This document shows, piece by piece, positions 481 to 61,050 of a stretch of 62,882 nt of DNA. The DNA comes from Octopus bimaculoides (Eukaryota): positions 107,755,152-107,818,033 of the forward strand of contig NC_068983.1 of assembly GCF_001194135.2 (NCBI RefSeq). The letters are read 5' to 3'. Positions within the stretch are counted from its first letter, which is position 1, and each line of letters opens with the position of its first letter. The notes under the pieces are model-generated. The model ran no database searches. It worked only from the letters and a program-made list of their open reading frames with translations, and was not told the DNA's origin. A program made the position numbers and the translations under genes.

Positions 481-1389
481 ATTAGTGACCAACACAGTTT
501 ACACCTAGAAAATTTTCCATTCATGAGGTAATAGTCATCATAACACTATGTTAGTAGACACTTGTTTAAAGTGCTGCATAGCGAGTTCAAAACAAAGAGC
601 CATGCGGTTGTGAAGTGAACTTCTTAACAGTTGAGCTTAAACTGCTAAATACATCCCTGTATTTTTACAACTTTTGGATGCCTTAATATGTTCTCATTAT
701 TTGCACATTAACTTTTTTTTCATCAACAATACTAGTGGATACCCATGGAAAATTCATGAGTGATAAATATTAATTTTTGTAGTTAATTACTTGTGGCAAA
801 CTGTATTGAAAAGGTATGATTTAATAAAAACGACTTCGTCTTTAGCATTTAATAAATAATAAAATATACATGCAAATATATCATATATATGTATGCATGT
901 GTGTGTAATATATCATTTGTGGGTATGTATATATGACTACACATGGACAGTTAAACTAATATACATTTCTGTTCAGTATTCAGTTAACTAAAGTGCAGAC
1001 ATAATGAGAGAGTCACATCTCAACTAACTAAATGATCTGTCAGTATTTTTACTGTGGGCCAGTGGACTAGACAGAAAGATAGAAAGAGAAAAGTAGATAG
1101 AGGGGGGAGGGAGAGAGACATTGCAAATTATATCAGCAATTTTAATCTATAAAACAACCACTGGCTAATATATTTCAGGTTTGTTTTATAATTATGCTAG
1201 TTTTGCAATAACTCCTAATATCATTAAGCCTGTTTTTGTAATATTGCAACTGCAGTGAATGATTATTTGATATTGAAGTTTATTCAAATTGTTTATTGTT
1301 ATAATATTTCTAACAAAAGCTAAGCTTTGCAGTGCTGATTTCCTGACATATATTATATTTAGAAATGCTTTTAAGGAATGAAAGATGTC

Positions 1390-1984
1390 TACCTTTTCAT
1401 ATGTAATAATCAACAGGGTTGCAGACTGGGAAGTTAGATGGCCAGATGTAGGGGCGATGTGGTCACAGAAATTGTCTGACAGCCATGACTGGGTTCTTCT
1501 GCTTGTGTGGCATAGTGCAGAGTCCTGTTCCCAGACATATGGTCTTCCAGTAGCCACCCTCTTGACCCAGGGCAGCACTACCTCCACCAGGCACTTGATG
1601 TAGGCCTCTATGGTGGGCCATGTTGGAAGATGAATGGATGCATAACATCGCCATCACTAGTGATCACTCCAAACACCATGATGTTGACTGGGCATTTGAT
1701 TTTCATCACTCTCGGTACATGTTTTGGGGACATGGTAAGCCAATGGTTGTTCTGTGTGTTCACTATTTGTTTGTATTTGAGCTTCCTGCACAAATGCCAA
1801 GCAGTACAGAATATCATTTCTAAATTTCTGGCTGAGAGAATTGGATCATGGTGCTGTTTTTCCCACAGACAATGCCCAACTGACCCTACTATAGTGTTTT
1901 GTCGACAGAATCAGAAACAAACAATGTGCATGCATGCACGAAATCAAAAATTTGGAATGGCAACATTTTACTCATCACACCCTG
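1390..1984 (-). mobile_element. Truncated maT/DD37D-type transposon with frameshifted transposase
   Basis: Minus-strand fragments IMVFGVITSDG, VWEQDSALCH and WPSNFPVCNPVDYY; restoring one deleted base gives 37 residues between the 2nd and 3rd Asp; end CAGGGTGTGATGAG at 1984 abuts TA. Confidence 0.8.
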
Positions 1985-2035: not shown

Positions 2036-3656
2036 CACTGGCCAAAATATGTTTATGACTGATGATGACATTCCTTCATTAATTTATTTTTAACAAAACT
2101 GTATAAAATTATTTTTCATTATACAATCTATGTAGAATTTTGTTCTCTTTCAAATGATATAGGCATTATATATCTTTCTGCAATTTGAATAATTTTAATG
2201 TGCAATTAATTCAAATGTTTAAAAATTGTCAGCAAAATAAGTTTAAAACCATACCAACATTATTTTGTTTGAATTAAAAATTTACAACACAAAAGATTAA
2301 CAAACAAAAATTTATTATTAGTATCTGGTTCCATAACCGTTATTTTCAATCATGGACTTACAATGGTGGGACATAGAGTTTGACAAATGAGCACAAAAAT
2401 CACTTGGAATGTTCTACCATATTTCTTCAGTAAAATTATATAATTGGGACAAATTTGTTAAATTTTTAGCATGATCTCTTCTAGAAACATAATTCCATAA
2501 ATTTTGTATCAGATTCAAATCTGGGCTCTGCAGAGGCCTCTCAATAACCACCATGTTATTGCACTCAAAATATTGCAAATTTCCTTGCCTTATTATGAAC
2601 AGGGCAATTGTCCTGCTGGAAAATAGATCCCGGTGGTATCTGATCATTTAAATATGGCAGCACATATTTATTTACTAATAGCCTACACTGTTCAGTCTGC
2701 CATCAATCTTAACATTTGGACCAACAACTAAGCTGTTGAACATGGCCCACACCATTACCCCCCCCCCCTCCTGCTTGCAGTGTTTTCTTGATCACTTAGG
2801 ATGGAATTCTTCAGTTGGATGGCGTCTAACATAAGTCTTTCTGTCTCATCCAAAAATGCAGAAGTGGGATTCATTGCTCCAAAGAACTTTTAACCAATCT
2901 CTGGCTGTCCATTCAATATGGCTTTTAGCAAACTTGATCCACTTCTGCTGGTTTGTCTCAGAAATTATTAGCTTCTTTTGAGTGATCCAGCTGAACAGTC
3001 CAAATTCTTTTAGGTGGTTTCTTACAGTTTGTGGTGTAAAGCTGATGTCAGTTTCATCAGATAATTGCTTGTAAATGTCCACTGCTGTTAGCATTTGGTT
3101 ACTTTCAGAGAACCTATGAATTCACTGATCCATCTGTACCGTTGTTTTTCTCAGAGCGCCCATTCTTTGCCAATCTTTGTATTGGCCAGTGGCTTAATAA
3201 AGCTTCCATGCTTGAATACAACCCATTTTGCTGCATCCTAATTGCTTGCTAATGTTCATGAAGGACACATTTTGCTGATGAAGCAACACAATCTTTGATC
3301 TAGTAACTGGGCTGATACTACAGCGCTTTCCCATAGCGAATTAATGTGTAACATTGCTCGATTATTAAACATAACAGTGCAGTACGACCAGCCATTTGAC
3401 CACCCATTTGGTTATTAATTTGCATAATCTTGGTGCAGTCTTAAACTTATTTTGCTGACAATTTCTAATCATTTGAATTAATTGCACATTAAAATTATTT
3501 GAATTGTGGAAACATATATAATGCCTATATCATTTGAAAGAGAAAAAATTCTACATAAACAGTAAAAAGTAAAATAATTACATACAGTTTTGTTAAAAAT
3601 ATATTTATGAAGGAATAGAACTGTCATCATCGGTTTTAAATTTACTTTAGCCAGTG
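2036..3656 (-). mobile_element. Full-length but decayed Tc1-like transposon
   Basis: About 185-bp imperfect terminal inverted repeats (CACTGG.../...CCAGTG followed by TA); transposase fragments DWLKVLWSNESHF, FQQDNCPVH and QSPDLNLIQNLW. Confidence 0.9.
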
Positions 3657-11228: not shown

Positions 11229-11269
11229 AAAACAGTCAGGCCATTAAGAATAGTGTAGAAAGGAAATAT

Positions 11270-11490
11270 TGGTTTTAAATTTTGGCACAAGGCCAGCAAT
11301 TTGGGGGGAGAGGGTAAGCTGATTATATGGACACCAGTCATCAACTGGTACTTATTTTATTGATCCCAAAAGAATAAAAGACAAAGCTGACCTCGGTGAA
11401 ATTTGAACTCAGAATGTAAAGATGGATGAAATACCACTAAGTATTTTATCTTTTGCCCAGTATGCTAATAATTCAGCCAGTTCGCTGCTT
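11270..11490 (-). mobile_element. Family C SINE
   Basis: TTGGCACAAGGCCAGCAATT...AATTTGAACTCAGAA. Confidence 0.8.
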
Positions 11491-14069
11491 TATAGAAAGG
11501 AAATATTAAGAAGCTCAATGATTATTAAACAGTTCAATCACTAAATATTGTTTAATTGGAGGGTATGTGATTAAAAAAACAGTGATAAAAATATTGCATA
11601 ATAATAAACATGTGCAATGAAGGTATATATAACTTGAGTGATTTGAAATTCATGACTCGAATATAATTCAATGAATGTGAAACAAAGATAGCAACTGAAC
11701 ATCAGGGGTATTTTCTATTTCGTGCAAGAGAGAAACTATATTTGGTAGCGCAAGAGGAAAATATTCGATAAAATATGAATAAAGAATACACAGCATAAAA
11801 GAAGGATTATGAGGTGCTAGACAAGCATTAGATTTTTCATCACAATATTAAACCTCATAAGATGTATGACATAAACCAGTTAAACCCTTGCTTGTATGTA
11901 TGTGTGTGTGTGGGGGGGGAATAGATGTTAATGACAGCATTCACAGTTGGTAGAGGTGGTGAGAATGCTGTTGTTTATCTGCAAGATAGTCCTTATTGAA
12001 CAGACCTATGACCAATGACATTTCGACCATGAAACTCCATCCCTTCTCTTAAGCATTGCATATCTAAGACAAATTGCCTATGGTGACTTTTTCAAAACAG
12101 TAGTGTGTAATTTGAAGCAAGTTTGACTGTTATTTCCAGCAAATCGAGGAACCATGTATATGTTCTTTGCTTGGCTTGTGGTGGCGATGATTGTTGAAGT
12201 GATTTGTAAATGAAGCAGAAATCTGAACTTGAAGCACTACAGGGAAAAATAATCATTTGATGCTGTAAGAATATTTAAGAAAGTGAGAAAGACTTCATAC
12301 TCTCTCTCTCTCCCTCTCTTTCTTTCTCTCTTTCTCTCATTTATACCATTTATACACATTCTCTTTTTCACAATTACACATGCATAAGCACTCACCCCCA
12401 AGACTTGTATCGTATATATGCCTCATACGTTTAAAACAGAAAAGATGGCGATAAGACTTACATCTAAAGTATGTTTGAAAGATATACATTTGTCTTGACT
12501 GCATGGTAGAATTTAGTGTCACTCAAATGACAGCTTTTGCTTTCAAAGAGGAGATAATGCCAGTTATAGATTTTAATGGTGATTTAAAAGAAATAGATGA
12601 TAGCTATGGAATTGTGCACTGGGTATGGATAAAAGGATAGAACGTTAAGAATGGCATAAAAGATGTGCGGTATATGCTTTTTTTTTCTTAAAAAAAAAAA
12701 AGAAATGGTAAACAATAATGAATATAATAGAGAAAAATATAAATATTGATTGTTGGAGGAGACAGTAAAAGTATTAAAACTCAAGGTATTCCAAGCCTGC
12801 ACCAATGACCATGCAGTTATTTGTGAGCCAATGTTACTGATGATTTATACTTATAGTGTTAGAATTACAAATAGAAAAGAAAAAAGGCATAAAGAATCAA
12901 AAGAAAAAACATAAGAAATCTATAGAAGCAGAATTAAAAAAACAAAACTACTGTAATAAGACATTAGCAACTAGAAGCTACTAAAATGTCTAAATAGAAT
13001 TGTGAAATAGTAAACACAAGTTTTAGAGGAGAATGGACTGAAACGTTTTAAGGACAGATGGTTGAAAAGACATTTTGGATCAAGATGTAGTCAGTAAAAG
13101 AATATTTCCTAAAACTATTGCATGCTTTCATTCCCTAAAAAGATTGTAAGGAAGATTATAAGAAATAAAGAAAGATATTGATAAAACGACGGAGAAAATG
13201 TATAGTGGGGAAAATACATAACAACAGTTAGAAGGTTAGAAAACAAAATGTAAAAAAGAAGTTCAGCCGAAGAAAATAAATGCCTGAGGAATTCTTATAT
13301 TTCAGAATGTTAGCATATCTAGTGTAGTTTTGTCATAAATCATTCAAAACATTGTCTCAGAAAAACAGCCAGAATATGAAATACTACTTGACATTAAATT
13401 GATCTCAATCTAAATTCCACATCTGTAGAGTATTGAGAAATAGATACCATACTTAGTACATCGCTTCCTTACAAAGTGACTGAGATTTATTTAGGGTGGG
13501 GTTTTTGATGATTCTGACATTTTAGAACTATGACAAAGATAAACTTCTCTAACATTAATTATGAATATACACATAATTATTTTAAAATATAATTTATATT
13601 TCTAAAGCAAGAAATGTTTATAAATGTCTTGTAAATGAATTTTACATTGGGTATCACTTTATATTAATAAGAATAGGAAGGTATTATCCGTAGTTGAATT
13701 TTACTAGCCATTTAATATGATGAATTAATATTTATATCCAAGACGTGAGACATGCATCACTATCATGGATTTCTTCCCTTTATCTTATTTTTTTTTTACC
13801 ATTTAGTCAAGAAGGGAAGGATAGTTCTTATAACTATTTTCCCTAGGCTTCTAAGATTGGTAGGAAGATGATAAGAATCGAGAATCAAAGACTAGTTTTC
13901 AATACATACAACGGAGTAAAAACAGTTAAAAGCATTCAAAGATCGGGTAGTGGTGTAAAACTGAGTAATGGAATAAATCTGCCACCAAATAACTCACACC
14001 ACTAGAAGCTCAAAAAAATAGCACAAGATTTTGCTGCTCTAACAAGTCTATTAATCTATCACCTAGATT

Positions 14070-14460
14070 GGTTTCAAATTTTGGCACAAGGCCAGCAATT
14101 TTGTGGGAGAGGGTAAGTCGATTACATTAACCCCAGTGTTCAACTAGTAATTATTTTATCGACCGATGAAAAGCTAAATCAATCTCCATGGAATTTGAAC
14201 TCAGAATATAAAGACAGACAAAATGCCACTAAACATTTTGCCCAGCATGCTAATGGTTCTGTCAGCTTGATGCCTTCTGCTACCCTAGGTTAATACTTTA
14301 TTATATTGGTTTCAAATTTTGACATAAGATCACCAGATTTGAGAGGGGATGGAGTAAGGTAATTTCATCAACTCTAGTGTTTAACTGGTGCTTATTTCAT
14401 AGACCCCAAAAAGATCAAACACAAAGTCGACTTCATCAGGTTTAACACATGGAAAGCTAC
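14070..14460 (-). mobile_element. Two adjacent family C SINE copies
   Basis: Two starts GGTTTCAAATTTTG at about 14070 and 14308. Confidence 0.75.
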
Positions 14461-17215: not shown

Positions 17216-17314
17216 AAATATATATAAAATATATAGTTTAATCAGAGCTTGTTATTAACAATAACTCACTTTAATACAGAAGGAAAATGTAATGCTCGTT
17301 GTGAGCTATATTCA

Positions 17315-18045
17315 AAATAATATTATTATGGAGGCAACACAGGCGAAGTCTAAAAGAGCATAATTGAAATACGCATCCAAAACTTATGGCATCGCTGCTG
17401 ATGGTGGACCAGCCCTGGTATGTAGATGTATTTATGAACTTAGTGTAACATCCTGATGAGGGGAATGTCTTGGTCTAGAGCACTGCGACGCGTAATCACG
17501 GAAGTGTGAATTTGAGTCTCATAGGTGACAACCATTACTTTTTTCTGCAAAATAGGGGTAGCTTATCCTGTTCAGGCTATATTATTAGCATTATCCTGCG
17601 TTTGAGAATTTAAAATCACTTCTTTAACTTTCTAAGACATCTCAACGCTTCCAAAAGCAAACTTCGTTTGTTTGTTTACGTTCATCGTAATTTGAATTTA
17701 ATATGAAATATGTCATATTCCTTGGCACATCTCTGAAACGGTCCGTAGATGTGATTTTTTTTTCTTTCGTTAGTTTTAATATGTCTTTAATACTTAATCC
17801 TTTCAAGTTAAATTTTTAATTTCATTATACAATGTACGATTTTAAATGTAATTATGATATTTTTTAAAATTCAATCATATTTTATGCATTGCATTGATAT
17901 TGTCTATTTATATATATTTGTGTATTTTGGAATTTTGTTTCCATTTTATAGAGAATATATGTATTTATATACATAAGTTTTGGATGTGTATTTCAATTAT
18001 GTTCTTTTAGACTTCGCCTGTGTTGCCTCCATAATAATATTATTT
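17315..18045. repeat. 74-bp inverted repeat cassette enclosing a split hammerhead
   Basis: Arms 17315-17388 and 17972-18045 match at 72 of 74 positions. Confidence 0.95.
17448..17752 (+). ncRNA. Discontinuous type I hammerhead ribozyme candidate (275-nt stem II region)
   Basis: ACATC-CTGATGA(17453-17459)-GGGGAATGT ... ACATCTCT-GAAA(17735-17738)-near-palindrome ACGG-T-CCGT-site GTA(17745-17747)-GATGT. Confidence 0.65.
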
Positions 18046-18046
18046 C

Positions 18047-18113
<67 letters not shown>

Positions 18114-18659: not shown

Positions 18660-18699
<40 letters not shown>

Positions 18700-18705
<6 letters not shown>

Positions 18706-40384: not shown

Positions 40385-42114
40385 CCAGGCAGTGGCTCTC
40401 ATGGCTCCTGATCTTAACTGGTTGGAAGTGTTATCATGTCCATGTTTTCTCTTGGTATAAAAGATGGGTTACAGCAAATATTCTGCTCAGTACCACAGAT
40501 TTGCTTGTCAGTTGTTTGACCTTAACCAGTTTGGCATGTTTCTTAGTGGCTGAAAGTATGTGCATCACTGATCATGAGCAGAAGTAGTAGGGGAGCATCA
40601 CAGCAATGTGTTGAGAGGAATTCTTTGGGATTTGAATAATTCACCTCTGGAAACCTGGTAGTTTTGTTCAACATCCTTAAACCATTATTCAATGACCTTT
40701 TGATTGTAATTGGCTACTTGACCTGAAGAAAATTCTAGGCCCCTCCAGCAAGGTCATGCATTGTTTATCTTCATATGAAATCACCATGTCACGCACATAT
40801 GGCTGTGGTGCATGTGCCTGGTGTACTCTTATCAGACAGGAAGTCATGATAGGCTTCGTATATTTTACTCCAGGGTCACTTTGATGGTATGCACTGCTCT
40901 CTCACTCAATAACAATAATGATAATCCTTTCTGCTCTAGGCACAAGACCTGAAATTTTGTGGGAGGAGGTTAGCCGGTCACATCAACCCCCAGTACTTGA
41001 CTGCTACTCAATTTATTGACCCCGAAAGGAGAAAAGGCAAAGTTGACCTCAGTGGAATTTGAACTCAGAATATAGCAATGGATGAAATACTGCTAAGCAT
41101 GTCATCCAGCATGCTAATGATTCTGCCAGTTCGCCACCTTAAAAATAATTATTATTATTATTATAATAATATACAAAGCAGTGGCTCTCATGGCTTCTGA
41201 TCTTAACTGAGTGGAAGTGTTATCATGGACATGTTTTGTCTTGATATAAAAGATTGGCTATGATAAATATTCTGCTCAATACCACAGATATACTTGTAAT
41301 TTACTTAACCTTAACCAGCTGAATATGTCCCTTAGTAGCTGACAAAATATGCATCTCTAATCGTGAGCAAGTGAGCATCACAGCCATGTGCTGAGAGGAA
41401 TTCTTTAGCATTCGAATAATTCACCTCTGGAAACATGAGTATTTCATTCGTCATTCTTAAACAAACCTTATTCAGAACCTTTGAGTGGGATGGGCTACTC
41501 AACCTGAACAATTTTTAACTGGGCTCCATCTGCAAGGACATACACTGTTTATCTTGATATGAGGTCACCATATCATGTACATATGGTTGTGATGCTTGTG
41601 CCTAGTGTATCCTTATTAGATTTGTATCCTATTGTTGCTTTGATGGCATGCATTACTCTCTTGCTCAATAATAATAAAAATACATTCTAACTTTCTACAA
41701 TAGGTACCAAGGCCTGAAATTTTGGAAGAGGGGCCAGTAGGTTACATAGACCCCAGTACTCAACAGATACATTGACAATGAAAGAATGAAAGGCAAGGGC
41801 AATCATAGCAGTATTTGAACTCAGAACATAAAGACAAACTGCCACTAAACATTTTGTCCAGCATGCTATTAATTTCGCCTGCTTGCTGCCTTAATAATAG
41901 TAATATTTCTATCAGAGGCACAAGACCTGAAATTTGTGGGGAGGGAGCTAGTTGGTTACATCTACCTCAGTGCTTAACTGGTACTTATTTTATCAACCCT
42001 GAATGGAGAGGCAAAGTCAGCCTTGGAGAAATTTGAACTCAGAACAGAAAGACTGACAAAATGCTGCTAAGCATTTTGCCTGGCATGTTAATAATTCTGC
42101 CAGCTTTCTGTCCT

Positions 42115-42159
<45 letters not shown>

Positions 42160-42377
42160 CCTTTCTACTGGAGGCATAAGGTCTCAAATTTGGGTGGGGA
42201 GGGGATTGTCAATTACATCGACCCCAGTGTTTCACTGGTACTTAATTTATCGACCCTGAAAGGACGAAAGGCAAAGTCAACCACAATGGAATTTGAACTC
42301 AGAATGTAGTGACGGGCTAAATGCCACTAAGCATTTCGTCCAGCATGCTAATTATTCTGCCAGCTCACTGCTTTAAT

Positions 42378-42421
<44 letters not shown>

Positions 42422-43100
42422 TAATAATAATGATTTCAGACTTTTGTACAGGGCCCGCAAGTTTAGGGGAAGGCATAAGTTGTATACCTTGACCTCAGTA
42501 TTTAACTGGTACTTATTTTTTTCAGCTCCAAAAGGATGAAAGGCAGAGTCAACCTTGGTAGAATTTGAACTCAGAACATAAATACGGTGCCCAAAGTGCT
42601 CACAATTCTGCCAGCTGAGTAATAATAATAGTAATAATAATAATGGTTTCAAATTTTGCCACAAGGGCAATAACTTTGGGGGAGGGGATGAGTTGATTAC
42701 ATCAACCTCAGTGTTCAGCTGGTACTTATTTTATCCACCCTGAAAGCATGGAAAGCAAAGCTGACCTAAGCAGAATTTGAATTCAGAACATGGCAACAGG
42801 TGAAATACCACTAAGCATTTTGTCCAGCATGCTAACAATTCTACTATTCTACTAGCTCACCACCTTTAACAACAACAATAACAACAATAATAATTATTAT
42901 TATTGTTATTATTTCAAATATCTGCTACAAGGGTAGTAGCTTGGTGGGGGTAGAAATGAGTTGCTTCCATCGACCCCAATGTTCAACTGGTACTTATTTT
43001 ATTCACCCTGAAAGGATGAAAGGCAAAGTTAACCTCAACGAATTTGTACTCAGAACGTAGCAACAGGTGAAATACCACTAAGCATATTCAGTTGGCTAAT
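40385..43100 (-). mobile_element. Head-to-tail cluster of two ~520-bp repeats (40385-40910, 41175-41680) and about 7 family C SINEs, joined by (AAT)n
   Basis: Repeated AATTTGAACTCAGAA and CTAAGCATT motifs, all in one orientation. Confidence 0.85.
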
Positions 43101-48919: not shown

Positions 48920-49620
48920 AAAATAAAATTTAAAAAAATAATAATGATAAGGCAGAATGCTCAACTGAAAGCATATTTTAATATAGATGTGTGTAAAGAG
49001 GATTAAAAAGGATTTTAACCAGCTTTCATTGCATGGCAAATTTTCAAGTAGAGGGAAAATGAAAATAATGTTTTTTACAAAAATATAGAAAATATATAAA
49101 AAAATAAATATACCAATACACTATACTCAAGAAGTAAATTTATATTTACAATATAAATTTACTTCTTGTTTCTCTAAGAACAGACATAAACTTCCTGTTG
49201 ACAAAGAGTCAAGAACTCCAACTAAAGAGTAGAAAACCCACAGAATTGTCTTCCCTTACACACTCTTCCTGTTTGTCACCACACTTCCTGTTTAACACAA
49301 ACTCTGTCTTTTTTAAACACAACACCATTCTTAATTATATGCATCCTAATCTTTCTAACACATATATACATGGATTACCATTGAACTTTAAAAACTCAAA
49401 GACAATATAATGTATTGGTATGTTTATTTTTTTATGTATTTTTAATTTTTTTGTAAAATACATTATTTTCATTTTCCATCTTCTTGAAAATTTGCCATGC
49501 AATGAAAGCCGGTTAGAAATCCTTTTTAATCCTCCTTATACACATCTATATTAAAATATGCCTTCAGTTTAGCATTCTGCCTTATCATTATTATTATTAT
49601 CATTATTATTTATTTTCCTA
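48916..49620. repeat. Foldback element with ~190-bp inverted arms and an internal perfect hairpin
   Basis: Arms about 48937-49120 and 49411-49595, roughly 90% identical by eye; 19-bp perfect hairpin 49128-49146 / 49150-49168. Confidence 0.9.
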
Positions 49621-51211: not shown

Positions 51212-52057
51212 CAAGGGGATACCCAAAAGTAACCAGAAACATTCTCTGTGGGACAAGCCCACTGTAATTCAGGCTTCTACTACCAGAAGTCATTTGATGT
51301 GACCCTCAGGCATCAGTCTGCCAACTGGTGTAGCCAGGTGAGGTTGTACTCTCACGTGGTGCATCTTTGTTTTGCAGTGTTACTCTCCTGTTCATCAAAG
51401 GAACAGCATGCTTCCGTGAAATTCTGTTTTCTTCTGGAGAAAACGAAGGCTGAAACAGTTATAATGCTTCAAAACTGTCATGAGCAAAACACAAACTTAC
51501 AAGTGGTTTACATACTTTAAGAATAGTCACTTGTCGCTTGAGGACCAATCTCGTTCAGGGTGACTGTCAACCTCTCAAACGAATGAAAACATGAAAATTC
51601 ATGAATTGATCCAGGAGGACCGTCACTGTACAGCTGATGAGATGACTGGTGTGTTCTGGAGCTCCTGCCAATGAGTTTTGAGCGAGAAGTTGCAAATGTA
51701 AAGGGCTTCAGCAAAATTTGTACCTCGCTTGCTCACAGAAGATCAAAAGCAGTCACGCCTGAATGCGTGTTGTGAACTGAAAGGACAGTTAGAAGTTGAT
51801 CCAGACCTTTTTCGAAGGTCATCGCTGGTGACAAAAGCTGGTGCTATGGAATTTACAGATGTAAAAGAGGTGAAGAAAAAAATGATGGAAGCATTAAAAA
51901 ACATCACTTTGCAAGAGCTCCAGCACAGCTTCCAACAGTAGAAAACGAGTTTGGACCAATGCATTGAATACTTTGAAGGTGATAAAAGTGTTAACATGTA
52001 AAACTAAGTGAATAAAATAATATTGCAAAATTCTGGTTTCTTTTGGGTATCCCCTCA
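51212..52057 (+). mobile_element. Internally deleted mariner
   Basis: TIRs (C/T)(A/G)AGGGGATACCCAAAAG, TA on both sides; VKFCFLL and KFVPRLLTEDQK; catalytic core deleted. Confidence 0.9.
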
Positions 52058-55560: not shown

Positions 55561-55983
55561 TACATATGTGTGTGTGTTTATGTCATAAGCTTCAAGAGTT
55601 ATAAAATAAATCTCTTGTTAATGGAACTTTGAAATAAAGTTATGAATAATAGCACCATTAAAATCTCTATATATATGTTTTAATATTCCACTTAGGTGTT
55701 GCAGTATTAATGACCTAGTGTAGAACTCAATATACAAATGTTTCTGTACAAAAGTGTTTCTCGAGTGCAGAGTGGTAACAAGAAAAAAGAGATAACAAAC
55801 GATTATCTTCTGAACTTCATTAGCTTTCAGTTACTTCCACTAGATGTTGTGGTGGACTCATAGTTGAATGCCTGAGTACCACCATTATGGCTTTATCAGA
55901 GCCTCAATCACGAAGAACAATCTATCTGGGAAAACAAAATGACACACACTCACACATATTTATATATACATCTACATACATAT

Positions 55984-56196
55984 ATGTGCAAATTTAGTAA
56001 ATGGAGTAAAACACATTCGGTTAAAATGTCTTAATGTTAAGCTGGTTCCTATGTATTTCCCTGAAGAGAAGATTACATCCTTATCAACATCACCTATTCC
56101 TTTGGAAGGTACAATTTGTAATCTTCGAAACATATGTTGGAAATAAAAGAATTCATTTAACATATGCGTTTTACTCCATTTACTAAATTTGTATAT
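55984..56196. repeat. Inverted repeat enclosing a hammerhead
   Basis: Perfect 24-bp arms 55989-56012 / 56168-56191, extending imperfectly on both sides. Confidence 0.9.
56054..56145 (+). ncRNA. Intact type I hammerhead ribozyme
   Basis: Stem I TATTTCC/GGAAATA (7 bp), CTGAAGA (56061-56067), stem II GAAGATTACA/TGTAATCTTC (10 bp, 39-nt loop), GAAA (56127-56130), palindrome ACATATGT, site GTT (56136-56138). Confidence 0.92.
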
Positions 56197-56818
56197 TTAC
56201 TCAATTACCCAAAATAACAAGGAGTTTCTACCTCATAAACAGGAGTTACACCACAGTCATTTTGTGATCTTTGCTACCTTGGTATCTATTAACCAATTTA
56301 TTTTGTCGAAGTTAATTATTAACTTGGAGAAAATAAATATATATAATAAAACATACATATATGTGTGTGTATATGGAAAAATGTACCCAGTCTACACTGT
56401 AAAGTATTTGCTTCTAGGAATGGCACCTAATAATATAACAAACCAAAAATGAAGCTCCTTAGAGAGATGTGGTGTTTCTTAGAGACCACATCTCAGACAG
56501 CAGCAGCTACCTATCCAAATTATGTGTATTACAGAGTTTATGAGGTATTTGAGGACATATTCGGCAATTTAATAAAACAATACTAATCTCTTTCCATTGA
56601 CATCATGTGATAGTTTCAAATGAGTGTCAGCATAATGCAAGCTGTGTCTTTCATTTCCAATCTTACATGTCTGATATTGGGGGAATATTCCTTTCCTGAG
56701 AATAGGCAAGGGTTGATGATACGAAGAGTATCTGGCAGCAGAAATTCCTCAATAAAATTCAGTGCAACCGATGCAAGTATTGAAAAGTAGACAGTAAACC
56801 GATTATACACACACACAC

Positions 56819-56882
<64 letters not shown>

Positions 56883-57261
56883 CAAGAAANNNNNNNNNNN
56901 NNNNNNNNNNNNNNNNNNNNNNNNNNNNNNNNNNNNNNNNNNNNNNNNNNNNNNNNNNNNNNNNNNNNNNNNNNNNNNNNNNNNNNNNNNNNNNNNNNNN
57001 NNNNNNNNNNNNNNNNNNNNNNNNNNNNNNNNNNNNNNNNNNNNNNNNNNNNNNNNNNNNNNNNNNNNNNNNNNNNNNNNNNNNNNNNNNNNNNNNNNNN
57101 NNNNNNNNNNNNNNNNNNNNNNNNNNNNNNNNNNNNNNNNNNNNNNNNNNNNNNNNNNNNNNNNNNNNNNNNNNNNNNNNNNNNNNNNNNNNNNNNNNNN
57201 NNNNNNNNNNNNNNNNNNNNNNNNNNNNNNNNNNNNNNNNNNNGATTATACACACACACAC

Positions 57262-57325
<64 letters not shown>

Positions 57326-57929: not shown

Positions 57930-57985
<56 letters not shown>

Positions 57986-60120: not shown

Positions 60121-60142
60121 AATAATAATAATAATAATAATA

Positions 60143-61050
60143 ATGGTTTCCAATTTTGACACAAGGCCAGTAATTTTGGGAGAGGGGATATATCATTTAC
60201 ATCAACCCTCAGAATTCAACTGGTACTTAATTTATTGAGCTCAAAAGGATGCAAGGCAAAGTCAACCTCTGAAGAATTTGAACTCAGGATGTAAAGATGA
60301 GCGAAATGCTACTAAGCATTTTGTCTGGCACAGCAACGATTCTGCCAGCTTGCCACCCTAATAATAATAATAATAATAACATTAATTTCAAATTTTGACA
60401 CAAGGCCAGCAATTTCAGGTAAATGGGCAAGTCAATTACATCAACTCCAGTGCTCAACCAGTACATATTCTATCGACCCACAAGGATGAATGATAAAGTT
60501 GTCCCTGGTGTTGTTTGAACTCAGAATGTAAAATCAGATGAAATGCCACTAAGCATTTTGCCTGGCACAATAACAATTTTGGCAGCTTGCTACCTTGATG
60601 ATAATAATAACAATCCTTTCTTCTATAGGTGCAAGGCCTGAAATTTGATGGGTGGGGACTTATTGATTGCAATGAGCCCAGTGTTCATCTGGTACATATT
60701 TTTTATTGACCCTGAAAGGATAAAAAGCAAAGTCAACCTCAACAATATTTGAACTCAGAATGTAAAGATGAACAAAATGTTGCTAAGCATTTTGCTCAGT
60801 GTGCTAATAATTCTGCCAGCTTTCCACCTTGATGATAATGATAATATTAATAATAACGATGATGATGATCATGATGATAATAATAATAGAACTTTCTGCT
60901 ATAGGTACAGGGCAGAAATTTTGTGGGAGGAAATTAGTCATTGGCCCAATGCTCAACCAGTACTTATTTTATTGCCTTGGACGGAATTTGAACTTAGAAC
61001 GTAAAGCCAGAAGAAATGCTGATAAGCATTTTTTTTTTTTTTTTGACAGG
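60143..61050 (-). mobile_element. Tandem cluster of four family C SINEs joined by (AAT)/(GAT) runs
   Basis: Four repeats of AATTTGAACT(C/T)AG(A/G)A and CTAAGCATTT. Confidence 0.85.

What the first reader, a model, noticed from the sequence alone, without database searches (positions are those of the whole stretch)
55984..56196. Intact hammerhead at the apex of a long hairpin
All core nucleotides and stems are perfect (7-bp stem I, 10-bp stem II, ACATATGT palindrome, GUU site). It is enclosed by a perfect 24-bp inverted repeat that extends to about 45 imperfect bp, with G-U pairs favouring the + strand. This is the same architecture as 17315-18045 but with unrelated sequence, suggesting a recurrent design: a rod-like RNA of about 210 nt capped by a possibly dimer-dependent ribozyme. 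It is the best candidate here for present-day activity.
Basis: partly seen in the sequence, partly recalled or inferred. Interest (0 to 1): 0.9.

Follow-up and report, generated by a model that had tools for sequence, protein, structure and literature searches.

The report
Lone hammerhead ribozyme motif in hairpin repeat
A complete hammerhead self-cleaving RNA motif of the kind common in animal mobile repeats sits inside a roughly 210-base hairpin-forming element in an AT-rich animal-like genome. It is real and not a chance match, but it is probably an ordinary, possibly decayed, relic of a ribozyme-carrying mobile element and not a new kind of system.

Summary
On the + strand, 56054-56145 carries every conserved hammerhead core letter: a 7-bp helix I, a 10-bp helix II with G10.1-C11.1, a 2-bp helix III with a palindromic AUAU loop, and a GUU|G site at 56138/56139. 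A perfect 24-bp inverted repeat (55989-56012 / 56168-56191) encloses it.

My descriptor finds nothing comparable in 400 shuffles. Rfam Hammerhead_1 aligns end to end (26.9 bits, E 4.5e-5 locally), but below its gathering score of 34, mainly because of a 55-nt stretch where the model expects about 10.

The motif matches animal type-I hammerheads from retrozymes, Penelope-like elements and SINE-like repeats. Predicted dimerisation through ACAUAUGU is favourable.

- The G-U strand bias: both strands fold equally well.
- The "recurrent design": the 17.4-kb motif is weak, does not fold into a hammerhead, and has no Rfam match.
- Present-day activity, which is untested.

The locus is single-copy in the window, not tandem, and I could retrieve no homologue. 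So covariation, family membership and the type of mobile element (retroposon relic or MITE-like) stay open. A 15-bp direct repeat hints at a 362-bp insertion into a microsatellite.

Verdict: probably a new member of a known kind; moderate interest.

The parts
55981..56199 (+). Whole hairpin-forming element (219 nt, 29% GC). As RNA it is a long imperfect stem with the hammerhead as an internal three-way junction.
   Evidence: Inverted repeat; folds; composition.
55989..56012 (+). Left arm of the perfect 24-bp inverted repeat, CAAATTTAGTAAATGGAGTAAAAC.
   Evidence: Exact reverse complement of 56168-56191.
56168..56191 (+). Right arm of the perfect 24-bp inverted repeat.
56054..56060 (+). Helix I, 5' strand (UAUUUCC).
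   Evidence: pair probability about 0.7.
56061..56067 (+). Core C3-A9, CUGAAGA.
56068..56126 (+). Helix II: 10 perfect bp (56068-56077 / 56117-56126, G10.1-C11.1) around a 39-nt partly structured insert (56078-56116).
   Evidence: pair probability 0.96. In the Rfam alignment this is a 55-nt stretch where the model expects 10.
56127..56129 (+). Core G12 A13 A14.
56130..56137 (+). Helix III: the palindrome ACAUAUGU, giving 2 bp plus an AUAU loop in the monomer and an 8-bp intermolecular helix in a dimer.
   Evidence: monomer pair probability 0.25; dimer cofold -47.4 against 2 x -17.8 kcal/mol.
56138..56139 (+). U17 and G1.1. The predicted self-cleavage site lies between them (GUU|G).
   Evidence: Position in the motif. 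Cleavage itself is not tested.
56139..56145 (+). Helix I, 3' strand (GGAAAUA).
55974..55988 (+). Left copy of the 15-bp direct repeat ACATACATATATGTG, a possible target-site duplication.
   Evidence: Only two exact copies exist in the window, 377 bp apart.
56351..56365 (+). Right copy of the 15-bp direct repeat.
   Evidence: Joining the flanks gives a plain compound microsatellite.
56192..56350 (+). Unique 159-bp segment between the hairpin and the right direct repeat. It ends in an AT-rich tail (AATAAATATATATAATAAA) and contains a palindrome with 21-nt arms at 56296-56338. It may be the 3' part of a 362-bp insertion.
   Evidence: That it belongs to the element is inferred, not shown.

Best explanation
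This is a solitary copy of a small, non-coding, AT-rich mobile repeat carrying a genuine type-I hammerhead ribozyme motif. The motif is the animal kind found in non-LTR retrozymes, the terminal repeats of Penelope-like elements, and SINE-like repeats such as Sm-alpha.

Proposed mechanism:
- When the + strand is transcribed, the RNA folds into a long hairpin.
- Helix I of the ribozyme continues into the outer stem, and helix II forms the tip.
- The 7-nt CUGAAGA and the 12-nt GAAACAUAUGUU form the catalytic junction.
- The RNA would cut itself after U56138, leaving a 2',3'-cyclic phosphate and a 5'-OH.
- Helix III has only 2 bp with a self-complementary loop. Efficient cutting would therefore need two copies to pair through ACAUAUGU, either in a multimeric transcript or at high RNA concentration.
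- No second copy lies nearby, so this locus is most likely a stranded, weakly active or inactive relic inserted into a (CA)n(TA)n(TG)n microsatellite.

Shown: the motif, its statistical support, the predicted fold and the predicted dimer.
Inferred: transcription, cleavage, the retroelement origin and the insertion boundaries.
For: - The core and helices are complete, and this is the only hit of that quality on either strand.
- The best shuffle reaches 12 bp for helices I + II, against 17 bp here, in 400 shuffles.
- Rfam Hammerhead_1 aligns over its full length, 26.9 bits, E 4.5e-5.
- The + strand minimum-free-energy fold forms all three helices.
- Three features are listed as hallmarks of animal type-I and Penelope-like-element hammerheads: G10.1-C11.1, a 2-bp helix III with a small palindromic loop, and a helix I of about 6 bp. 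Penelope-like-element variants also have a longer helix II (PMC4209133; PMC7229834).
- Low GC (29%) and a 219-362 bp unit size fit the 150-450 bp, under-50%-GC range of animal retrozymes, whose target-site duplications are longer than 4 bp.
- A 15-bp direct repeat flanks a 362-bp unit with an AT-rich tail. Joining the flanks gives a clean microsatellite.
- Penelope-like elements prefer microsatellite targets and often form inverted-repeat structures from truncated inverted copies (PMC8557442).
Against: - No homologue could be found, so there is no covariation and no evidence of a family.
- The Rfam score is below the gathering threshold, and the motif was missed in whole-window searches.
- Helix II is 10 bp with a 39-nt insert, where canonical motifs have about 4 bp plus a loop. 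The canonical loop 1-loop 2 contacts therefore cannot be recognised.
- The cleavage triplet is GUU, not the usual GUC or GUA.
- There is no tandem arrangement.
- No reverse transcriptase or GIY-YIG remnant was seen in the window, though the screen was crude.
- The best-conserved part of the inverted repeat is its outermost 24 bp, which is more typical of DNA-transposon termini.
- Both strands fold equally well.
Confidence: 0.55

Rival explanations
1. It is a miniature inverted-repeat (MITE-like or foldback) DNA transposon. Its internal loop happens to spell, or has acquired, a hammerhead core. The inverted repeat is a transposase-binding terminus, and the ribozyme has no role in the element's mobility. 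If the ribozyme were functional, this would be a new kind of ribozyme carrier.
For: - Size 219 bp, 29% GC, no coding capacity, and a perfect 24-bp terminal inverted repeat that decays inward.
- Possible 8-bp flanking repeat TATATGTG / TATATTTA, matching at 6 of 8 positions.
- The window holds several other elements bounded by inverted repeats, plus Tc1/mariner remnants.
- Both strands are equally stable, as expected for a DNA-level palindrome.
Against: - No second copy of the termini exists in the window, even allowing 3 mismatches.
- The target-site duplication is ambiguous in a TA-rich context.
- A chance origin of the core inside a hairpin is improbable: about 3e-7 per placement, and below 0.05 even under a very generous bound.
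- I found no report of a hammerhead inside a MITE. Of 7 papers holding both terms, I opened one, and it only cites a MITE tool.
Confidence: 0.25
2. It is a pure chance look-alike: an AT-rich imperfect palindrome next to a microsatellite that fortuitously matches the hammerhead descriptor. It has never been a ribozyme.
For: - Single locus with no homologues.
- Below the Rfam gathering score.
- Atypical helix II and U17.
- Minimal-descriptor hits do arise by chance: 0.33 per window when long helix II inserts are allowed.
Against: - No shuffle comes near this quality.
- The E-value is about 0.02 even after scaling to the whole window and all 4227 families.
- Independent family hallmarks that the descriptor does not require are also present: G10.1-C11.1 and a palindromic helix III loop.
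Confidence: 0.15
3. It is a host-domesticated element: a conserved single-copy hammerhead in an intron or untranslated region that processes a host transcript, like the intronic hammerheads of vertebrates.
For: It is a solitary copy with an intact core and long, stable flanking helices.
Against: - No gene context could be established.
- It is embedded between microsatellites and transposon debris.
- No conservation data are available.
Confidence: 0.05

Closest known systems
Canonical type-I hammerheads of animal non-LTR retrozymes (Cervera & de la Pena 2020, PMC7229834)
   Same: Type-I topology, full core, G10.1-C11.1, and a 2-bp helix III with a small palindromic tetraloop ('similar to invertebrate HHRs'). 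The carrier has low GC and a few hundred nt. Helix I is prolonged by the rest of the RNA, so the ribozyme sits at one end of a highly paired molecule.
   Different: Retrozymes are tandem arrays with one ribozyme per unit; here there is a single unit. Canonical helix II is about 4 bp with a loop that contacts loop 1; here it is 10 bp plus a 39-nt insert. The site is GUU. The unit is opened at the far end of the rod, not at the cleavage site.
Hammerheads in the pseudo-LTRs of Penelope-like elements (Cervera & de la Pena 2014, PMC4209133; Craig et al. 2021, PMC8557442)
   Same: A longer helix II, weak or palindromic helix III, dimer-dependent and weak cleavage, insertion into microsatellites, and frequent inverted-repeat structures made by truncated inverted copies.
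   Different: No reverse transcriptase or GIY-YIG remnant lies nearby. There is no unpaired base between A9 and 10.1. The inverted-repeat arms match well only over about 28-36 nt, not the whole overlap expected of two copies of one template.
SINE-like hammerhead retroposons Sm-alpha / Sj-alpha of schistosomes (Ferbeyre 1998; Laha 2000; cited in PMC8490949)
   Same: A short (about 330-360 nt), dispersed, non-coding repeat carrying one type-I hammerhead. Here there is a possible 362-bp unit with an AT-rich tail and a 15-bp flanking repeat.
   Different: No tRNA-like or Pol III head was detected. There is no sequence similarity and no evidence of copy number.
Miniature inverted-repeat and foldback DNA transposons
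   Same: Perfect terminal inverted repeat, about 200 bp, AT-rich, non-coding, set among other elements bounded by inverted repeats.
   Different: I found no report of MITEs carrying ribozymes. The target-site duplication and copy number are not established.

Membership tests
Hammerhead ribozyme, type I (Rfam RF00163) | Conserved core: C3 U4 G5 A6 N7 G8 A9, G12 A13 A14, the A15.1-U16.1 pair, and H17 not G | tested here: met
   CUGAAGA 56061-56067, GAA 56127-56129, A56130-U56137, U56138.
Hammerhead ribozyme, type I (Rfam RF00163) | Three helices around the core with helix I open-ended; G10.1-C11.1 closes helix II | tested here: met
   Helices of 7, 10 and 2 bp. The minimum-free-energy fold forms the junction.
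Hammerhead ribozyme, type I (Rfam RF00163) | Score at or above the curated gathering threshold (34 bits) | tested here: not met
   26.9 bits, E 4.5e-5, full model 1-45, and only when 56040-56160 is searched. No hit in the whole-window or 801-nt searches.
Hammerhead ribozyme, type I (Rfam RF00163) | Self-cleavage at the predicted site | not testable with these tools
   Needs in vitro transcription or end-specific RNA sequencing.
Hammerhead ribozyme, type I (Rfam RF00163) | Compensatory changes in the helices and an invariant core among homologues | tested here: inconclusive
   No homologue was retrievable from the window, the protein database, metagenome contigs or viral contigs. No eukaryotic genome collection was available.
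Canonical animal type-I hammerhead | Short helix II (about 4 bp) whose loop 2 contacts loop 1 of a ~6-bp helix I | tested here: not met
   Helix II is 10 bp followed by a 39-nt insert. Helix I is 7 bp followed by a 5x3 internal loop. Criteria are from PMC4209133.
Canonical animal type-I hammerhead | Helix III of 1-2 bp capped by a small palindromic loop | tested here: met
   AC-AUAU-GU at 56130-56137.
Non-LTR retrozyme | Tandem repeats of 150-450 bp, each with a hammerhead | tested here: not met
   No second copy in the window and no tandem repeat of the unit.
Non-LTR retrozyme | Low GC, non-coding; target duplications, when present, longer than 4 bp | tested here: met
   29% GC. A 15-bp direct repeat lies at 55974 and 56351, but whether it is a target duplication is inferred.
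Non-LTR retrozyme | Expressed as small circular RNA | not testable with these tools
   No transcriptome data available.
Penelope-like element (pseudo-LTR hammerhead) | Association with a reverse transcriptase plus GIY-YIG open reading frame, or with its terminal repeat | tested here: inconclusive
   No YxDD or GIY-YIG signature in stop-free segments of 60 aa or more. No RT or GIY-YIG Pfam domain in the 10 segments scanned (only a Tc1/Tc3 transposase HTH at 2849-3121). This screen is crude, and the window is only 63 kb.
Penelope-like element (pseudo-LTR hammerhead) | Microsatellite target and inverted truncated copies forming inverted repeats | tested here: inconclusive
   The flanks are a (CA)n(TA)n(TG)n compound repeat, and an inverted repeat is present. 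However, the arms align well only over about 28-36 nt.
MITE / foldback DNA transposon | Terminal inverted repeats, small size, no coding capacity | tested here: met
MITE / foldback DNA transposon | Fixed-length target-site duplication, and many copies sharing the termini | tested here: inconclusive
   The 8-bp flanks match at 6 of 8 positions in TA-rich DNA. No other copy of the terminus exists in the window. The whole genome was not searchable.
SINE-like hammerhead retroposon (Sm-alpha type) | Pol III / tRNA-related head, A-rich tail, flanking duplications | tested here: inconclusive
   ARAGORN finds no tRNA-like sequence. The AT-rich tail and the 15-bp repeat are present.

The most novel reading that the evidence does not exclude
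The hairpin represents a family of short elements bounded by inverted repeats, in which a working type-I hammerhead forms the internal junction of a ~210-nt rod. Two origins are possible. One is a DNA-transposon-like (MITE) carrier of a ribozyme. The other is a unit-length DNA copy of a rod-shaped circular ribozyme RNA, opened at its distal loop instead of at the cleavage site. Either would be a carrier architecture not yet described for animal hammerheads.
Probability: 0.12. Interest if true: 0.65.

Novelty: new member of a known kind. Interest (0 to 1): 0.38.

Why it matters
Type-I hammerheads are already known to be scattered through many animal genomes, in retrozymes, Penelope-like elements and SINE-like repeats. 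One more copy is not surprising. The points of interest are narrower:
- It is a complete core that standard Rfam annotation misses because of a long helix II insert. Routine scans may therefore undercount such variants.
- It lies inside a hairpin bounded by a perfect inverted repeat, a carrier shape not typical of described retrozymes. If a genome-wide family with this shape and cleavage activity exists, it would extend the known range of ribozyme-bearing mobile elements.
- It would also give a simple test case for dimer-dependent cleavage.

Tried and rejected
- **Whole-window Rfam at gathering thresholds, and an 801-nt permissive search.** Neither gave a hammerhead. Only a 121-nt search did, so the earlier negatives were filter and threshold effects.
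- **Second copy in the window.** blastn with word size 7, terminus search with 3 mismatches, and a single-sequence covariance model with filters off returned only the locus itself.
- **Relatives elsewhere.**
  - The 74-aa stop-free translation across the element gave nothing against the protein database.
  - Exact open-reading-frame look-ups gave nothing.
  - A 20-mer of the inverted-repeat arm hit 15 metagenome loci. All carry a single arm in unrelated bacterial- or phage-like contexts, so they are chance matches.
  - The core plus helix II 21-mer gave nothing in viral contigs.
- **Organism identification.**
  - A LINE-tail fragment found nothing in the protein database.
  - Full-text search for SINE strings found nothing.
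  - The source is evidently an animal-like eukaryote: microsatellites, SINE-like repeats and a Tc1 remnant. The species is undetermined.
- **Six-frame Pfam scan by coordinates.** A selected-segment scan confirmed only a Tc1/Tc3 helix-turn-helix domain.
- **tRNA-like head.** None found.
- **Bacterial promoter/terminator scan.** Uninformative for a eukaryote.
- **The 17.4-kb 'second hammerhead'.** Rejected as support for a recurrent design.
- **Co-occurrence of inverted repeats and hammerheads.** Elements bounded by inverted repeats cover 5.7% of the window, and both best descriptor hits lie in such elements. With one of the two motifs weak, this is suggestive at most.

Full report
**Context.** The window is AT-rich (about 32% GC) and full of (TA)n, (CA)n and (TAA)n microsatellites. 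It also holds assembly gaps, SINE-like repeats and transposon debris. A Tc1/Tc3 transposase helix-turn-helix domain at 2849-3121(-) is the only Pfam-confirmed piece. The window is therefore a scaffold of an animal-like eukaryote. The species could not be determined with the tools available.

**The observation.**
- The parts are: helix I UAUUUCC/GGAAAUA (56054-56060 / 56139-56145), CUGAAGA (56061-56067), a 10-bp helix II (56068-56077 / 56117-56126) closed by G10.1-C11.1 around a 39-nt insert, GAA (56127-56129), the palindrome ACAUAUGU (56130-56137), and U17 at 56138.
- The predicted cut is therefore between 56138 and 56139.
- The perfect 24-bp inverted repeat is 55989-56012 / 56168-56191. With four non-Watson-Crick positions it extends to 55981-56016 / 56164-56199.
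- The + strand minimum-free-energy structure is a long hairpin in which all three hammerhead helices form (-63.8 kcal/mol, z = -8.2).

**Is it more than chance?**
- In 400 dinucleotide-preserving shuffles of the window, a minimal descriptor hits 0.045 times per shuffle. The best helix I + II total is 12 bp, against 17 bp here.
- Shuffles destroy natural hairpins, so I also counted real junction placements with stems at least this long. There are 180,024, at 1,440 distinct positions, almost all in microsatellites.
- Multiplying by the composition-based probability of the core letters (3e-7) gives a deliberately generous upper bound of about 0.05.
- Rfam found nothing at gathering thresholds over the window, nor in a permissive 801-nt search.
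- When only 56040-56160 was searched, Hammerhead_1 (RF00163) aligned over its whole length: 56055-56144, 26.9 bits, E 4.5e-5, against a gathering score of 34.
- In that alignment, the unaligned stretch in helix II is 55 nt where the model expects 10, which probably accounts for most of the shortfall.
- Scaled to the whole window and all families, the E-value is about 0.02.
- Two family hallmarks that my descriptor does not require are also present. These are G10.1-C11.1 and a 2-bp helix III capped by a small palindromic loop, described as typical of animal and especially invertebrate type-I hammerheads (PMC4209133; PMC7229834).
- I conclude the motif is very probably descended from a real hammerhead.

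- The G-U argument fails. Two G.T positions (55986, 55988) favour the + strand, one A.C (56013) favours the - strand, and one T.T favours neither. The two strands fold equally well (-63.8 against -64.3 kcal/mol).
- The 'same architecture' at 17315-18045 is an element bounded by inverted repeats (76-nt arms at 96%).
  - With helix II inserts allowed up to 400 nt, it holds a descriptor hit: C3 at 17453, G12 at 17735, N17 at 17747, stems of 5/5/3 bp.
  - That hit has G.U at 10.1-11.1 and a ~270-nt insert.
  - The region is no more structured than shuffles (z = -0.31), and its minimum-free-energy fold does not form the junction.
  - Rfam gives no hammerhead there.
  - Such hits arise in 27% of shuffles, and 1% reach 5/5/3.
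- Elements bounded by inverted repeats cover 5.7% of the window. Two descriptor hits both falling in such elements is mildly suggestive, but it is not evidence for a recurrent design.

**How it would work.**
- In the monomer, helix II is firm (pair probability 0.96) and helix I fair (0.7). Helix III is weak (0.25).
- Two copies of 56048-56151 are predicted to pair through the palindrome. The dimer energy is -47.4 kcal/mol, against -35.6 for two monomers.
- This is the double-hammerhead arrangement established for newt satellite and Penelope-like-element ribozymes (PMC4209133; PMC7229834).
- Efficient cleavage would therefore be expected only in multimeric transcripts or at high RNA concentration.
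- No second copy exists in the window, and the unit is not tandemly repeated.
- Helix II is far longer than the canonical 4 bp, so the usual loop 1-loop 2 contacts cannot be recognised. GUU is an allowed but uncommon triplet (established hammerhead biochemistry).
- Present-day activity is possible but unproven. I put it at roughly one in three.

**What carries it.**
- The element is 219 nt, 29% GC and non-coding. Its inverted repeat is perfect only in the outer 24 bp and needs many gaps further in, which is a MITE-like shape.
- A 15-bp direct repeat, ACATACATATATGTG, occurs exactly twice in the window, at 55974 and 56351.
- The repeat brackets a 362-bp unit that starts at the base of the hairpin and ends in an AT-rich tail. 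Joining the flanks restores a plain compound microsatellite. That is a retroposon-like signature.
- Penelope-like elements are reported to target microsatellites and to form inverted-repeat structures from truncated inverted copies, with the hammerhead near the 3' end (PMC8557442). Animal retrozymes are now regarded as their non-autonomous derivatives (bioRxiv 10.64898/2026.07.22.740005).
- No reverse transcriptase or GIY-YIG remnant was seen, though the screen was crude.
- With one copy, the carrier type cannot be settled. I favour a retroelement-derived relic (0.55) over a MITE-like DNA element (0.25), a chance look-alike (0.15) or a domesticated host ribozyme (0.05).

**Comparison and novelty.**
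- The ribozyme works like, and by core, topology and helix III belongs with, animal type-I hammerheads.
- It fails two membership tests. It scores below the Rfam gathering threshold, and it lacks the short helix II and loop contacts of canonical motifs. It also fails the tandem-array criterion of retrozymes.
- Covariation and cleavage could not be tested.
- I file it as a probable new member of a known kind.
- There is a minority reading (about 0.12) that it represents an undescribed hairpin- or inverted-repeat-bounded carrier of a working hammerhead.
- Nothing in this work required a referred step.

Noticed in passing
window 17313-18047: A 735-bp element bounded by 76-nt inverted repeats (96%). 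It contains a weak hammerhead-like core match: C3 at 17453, G12 at 17735, N17 at 17747, stems of 5/5/3 bp, a ~270-nt insert in helix II, and G.U at 10.1-11.1. The junction is not formed in the minimum-free-energy fold (z = -0.31), and there is no Rfam hit.
   Followed up: yes
window 48921-49611: A 691-bp foldback element with 95-nt and 74-nt arm segments at 91-92% complementarity. It is flanked on both sides by (TA)n microsatellite, suggesting insertion into a TA repeat.
   Followed up: no
window 51214-52055: An 842-bp element with 25-nt terminal inverted repeats (96%). It encloses frameshifted open-reading-frame pieces that look mariner-like by eye, but Pfam did not confirm them.
   Followed up: partly
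window 2400-3400 (-) and 1195-1653 (-): Tc1/mariner-type transposase remnants. Pfam HTH_Tnp_Tc3_2 is confirmed at 2849-3121(-). A third, chance-level hammerhead descriptor hit (stems 5/3/3) lies at 2430-2329(-), at the edge of the Tc1-like remnant.
   Followed up: partly
window 11265-11450, 14064-14433, 40921-43035, 60140-60887: A SINE-like repeat family (about 190-260 bp units, 60-80% identity), often followed by (TAA)n. Several copies are clustered head to tail.
   Followed up: no
window 55974-55988 and 56351-56365: A perfect 15-bp direct repeat, ACATACATATATGTG, present exactly twice in the window. It brackets a 362-bp unit that begins with the hammerhead hairpin and is a possible target-site duplication.
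   Followed up: partly
window 56296-56338: A palindrome with 21-nt arms (90% complementary, 1-nt spacer) just before the AT-rich tail of the putative 362-bp unit.
   Followed up: no
window 18052-18104 and 18661-18704; 57250-57316 and 57933-57985: Unique segments of about 560-660 bp are bracketed by the same microsatellite on both sides: (TA)n in the first pair and (CA)n in the second. This may be a recurring pattern of insertion into microsatellites, or an artefact of assembly around them. N gaps lie next to several of them.
   Followed up: no
loci L001, L002, L004, L009, L014: The 20-mer of the inverted-repeat arm matches a 26-nt stretch just upstream of an ATG in five near-identical metagenome contigs. 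It looks like a bacterial or phage ribosome-binding region and is unrelated to the element.
   Followed up: yes
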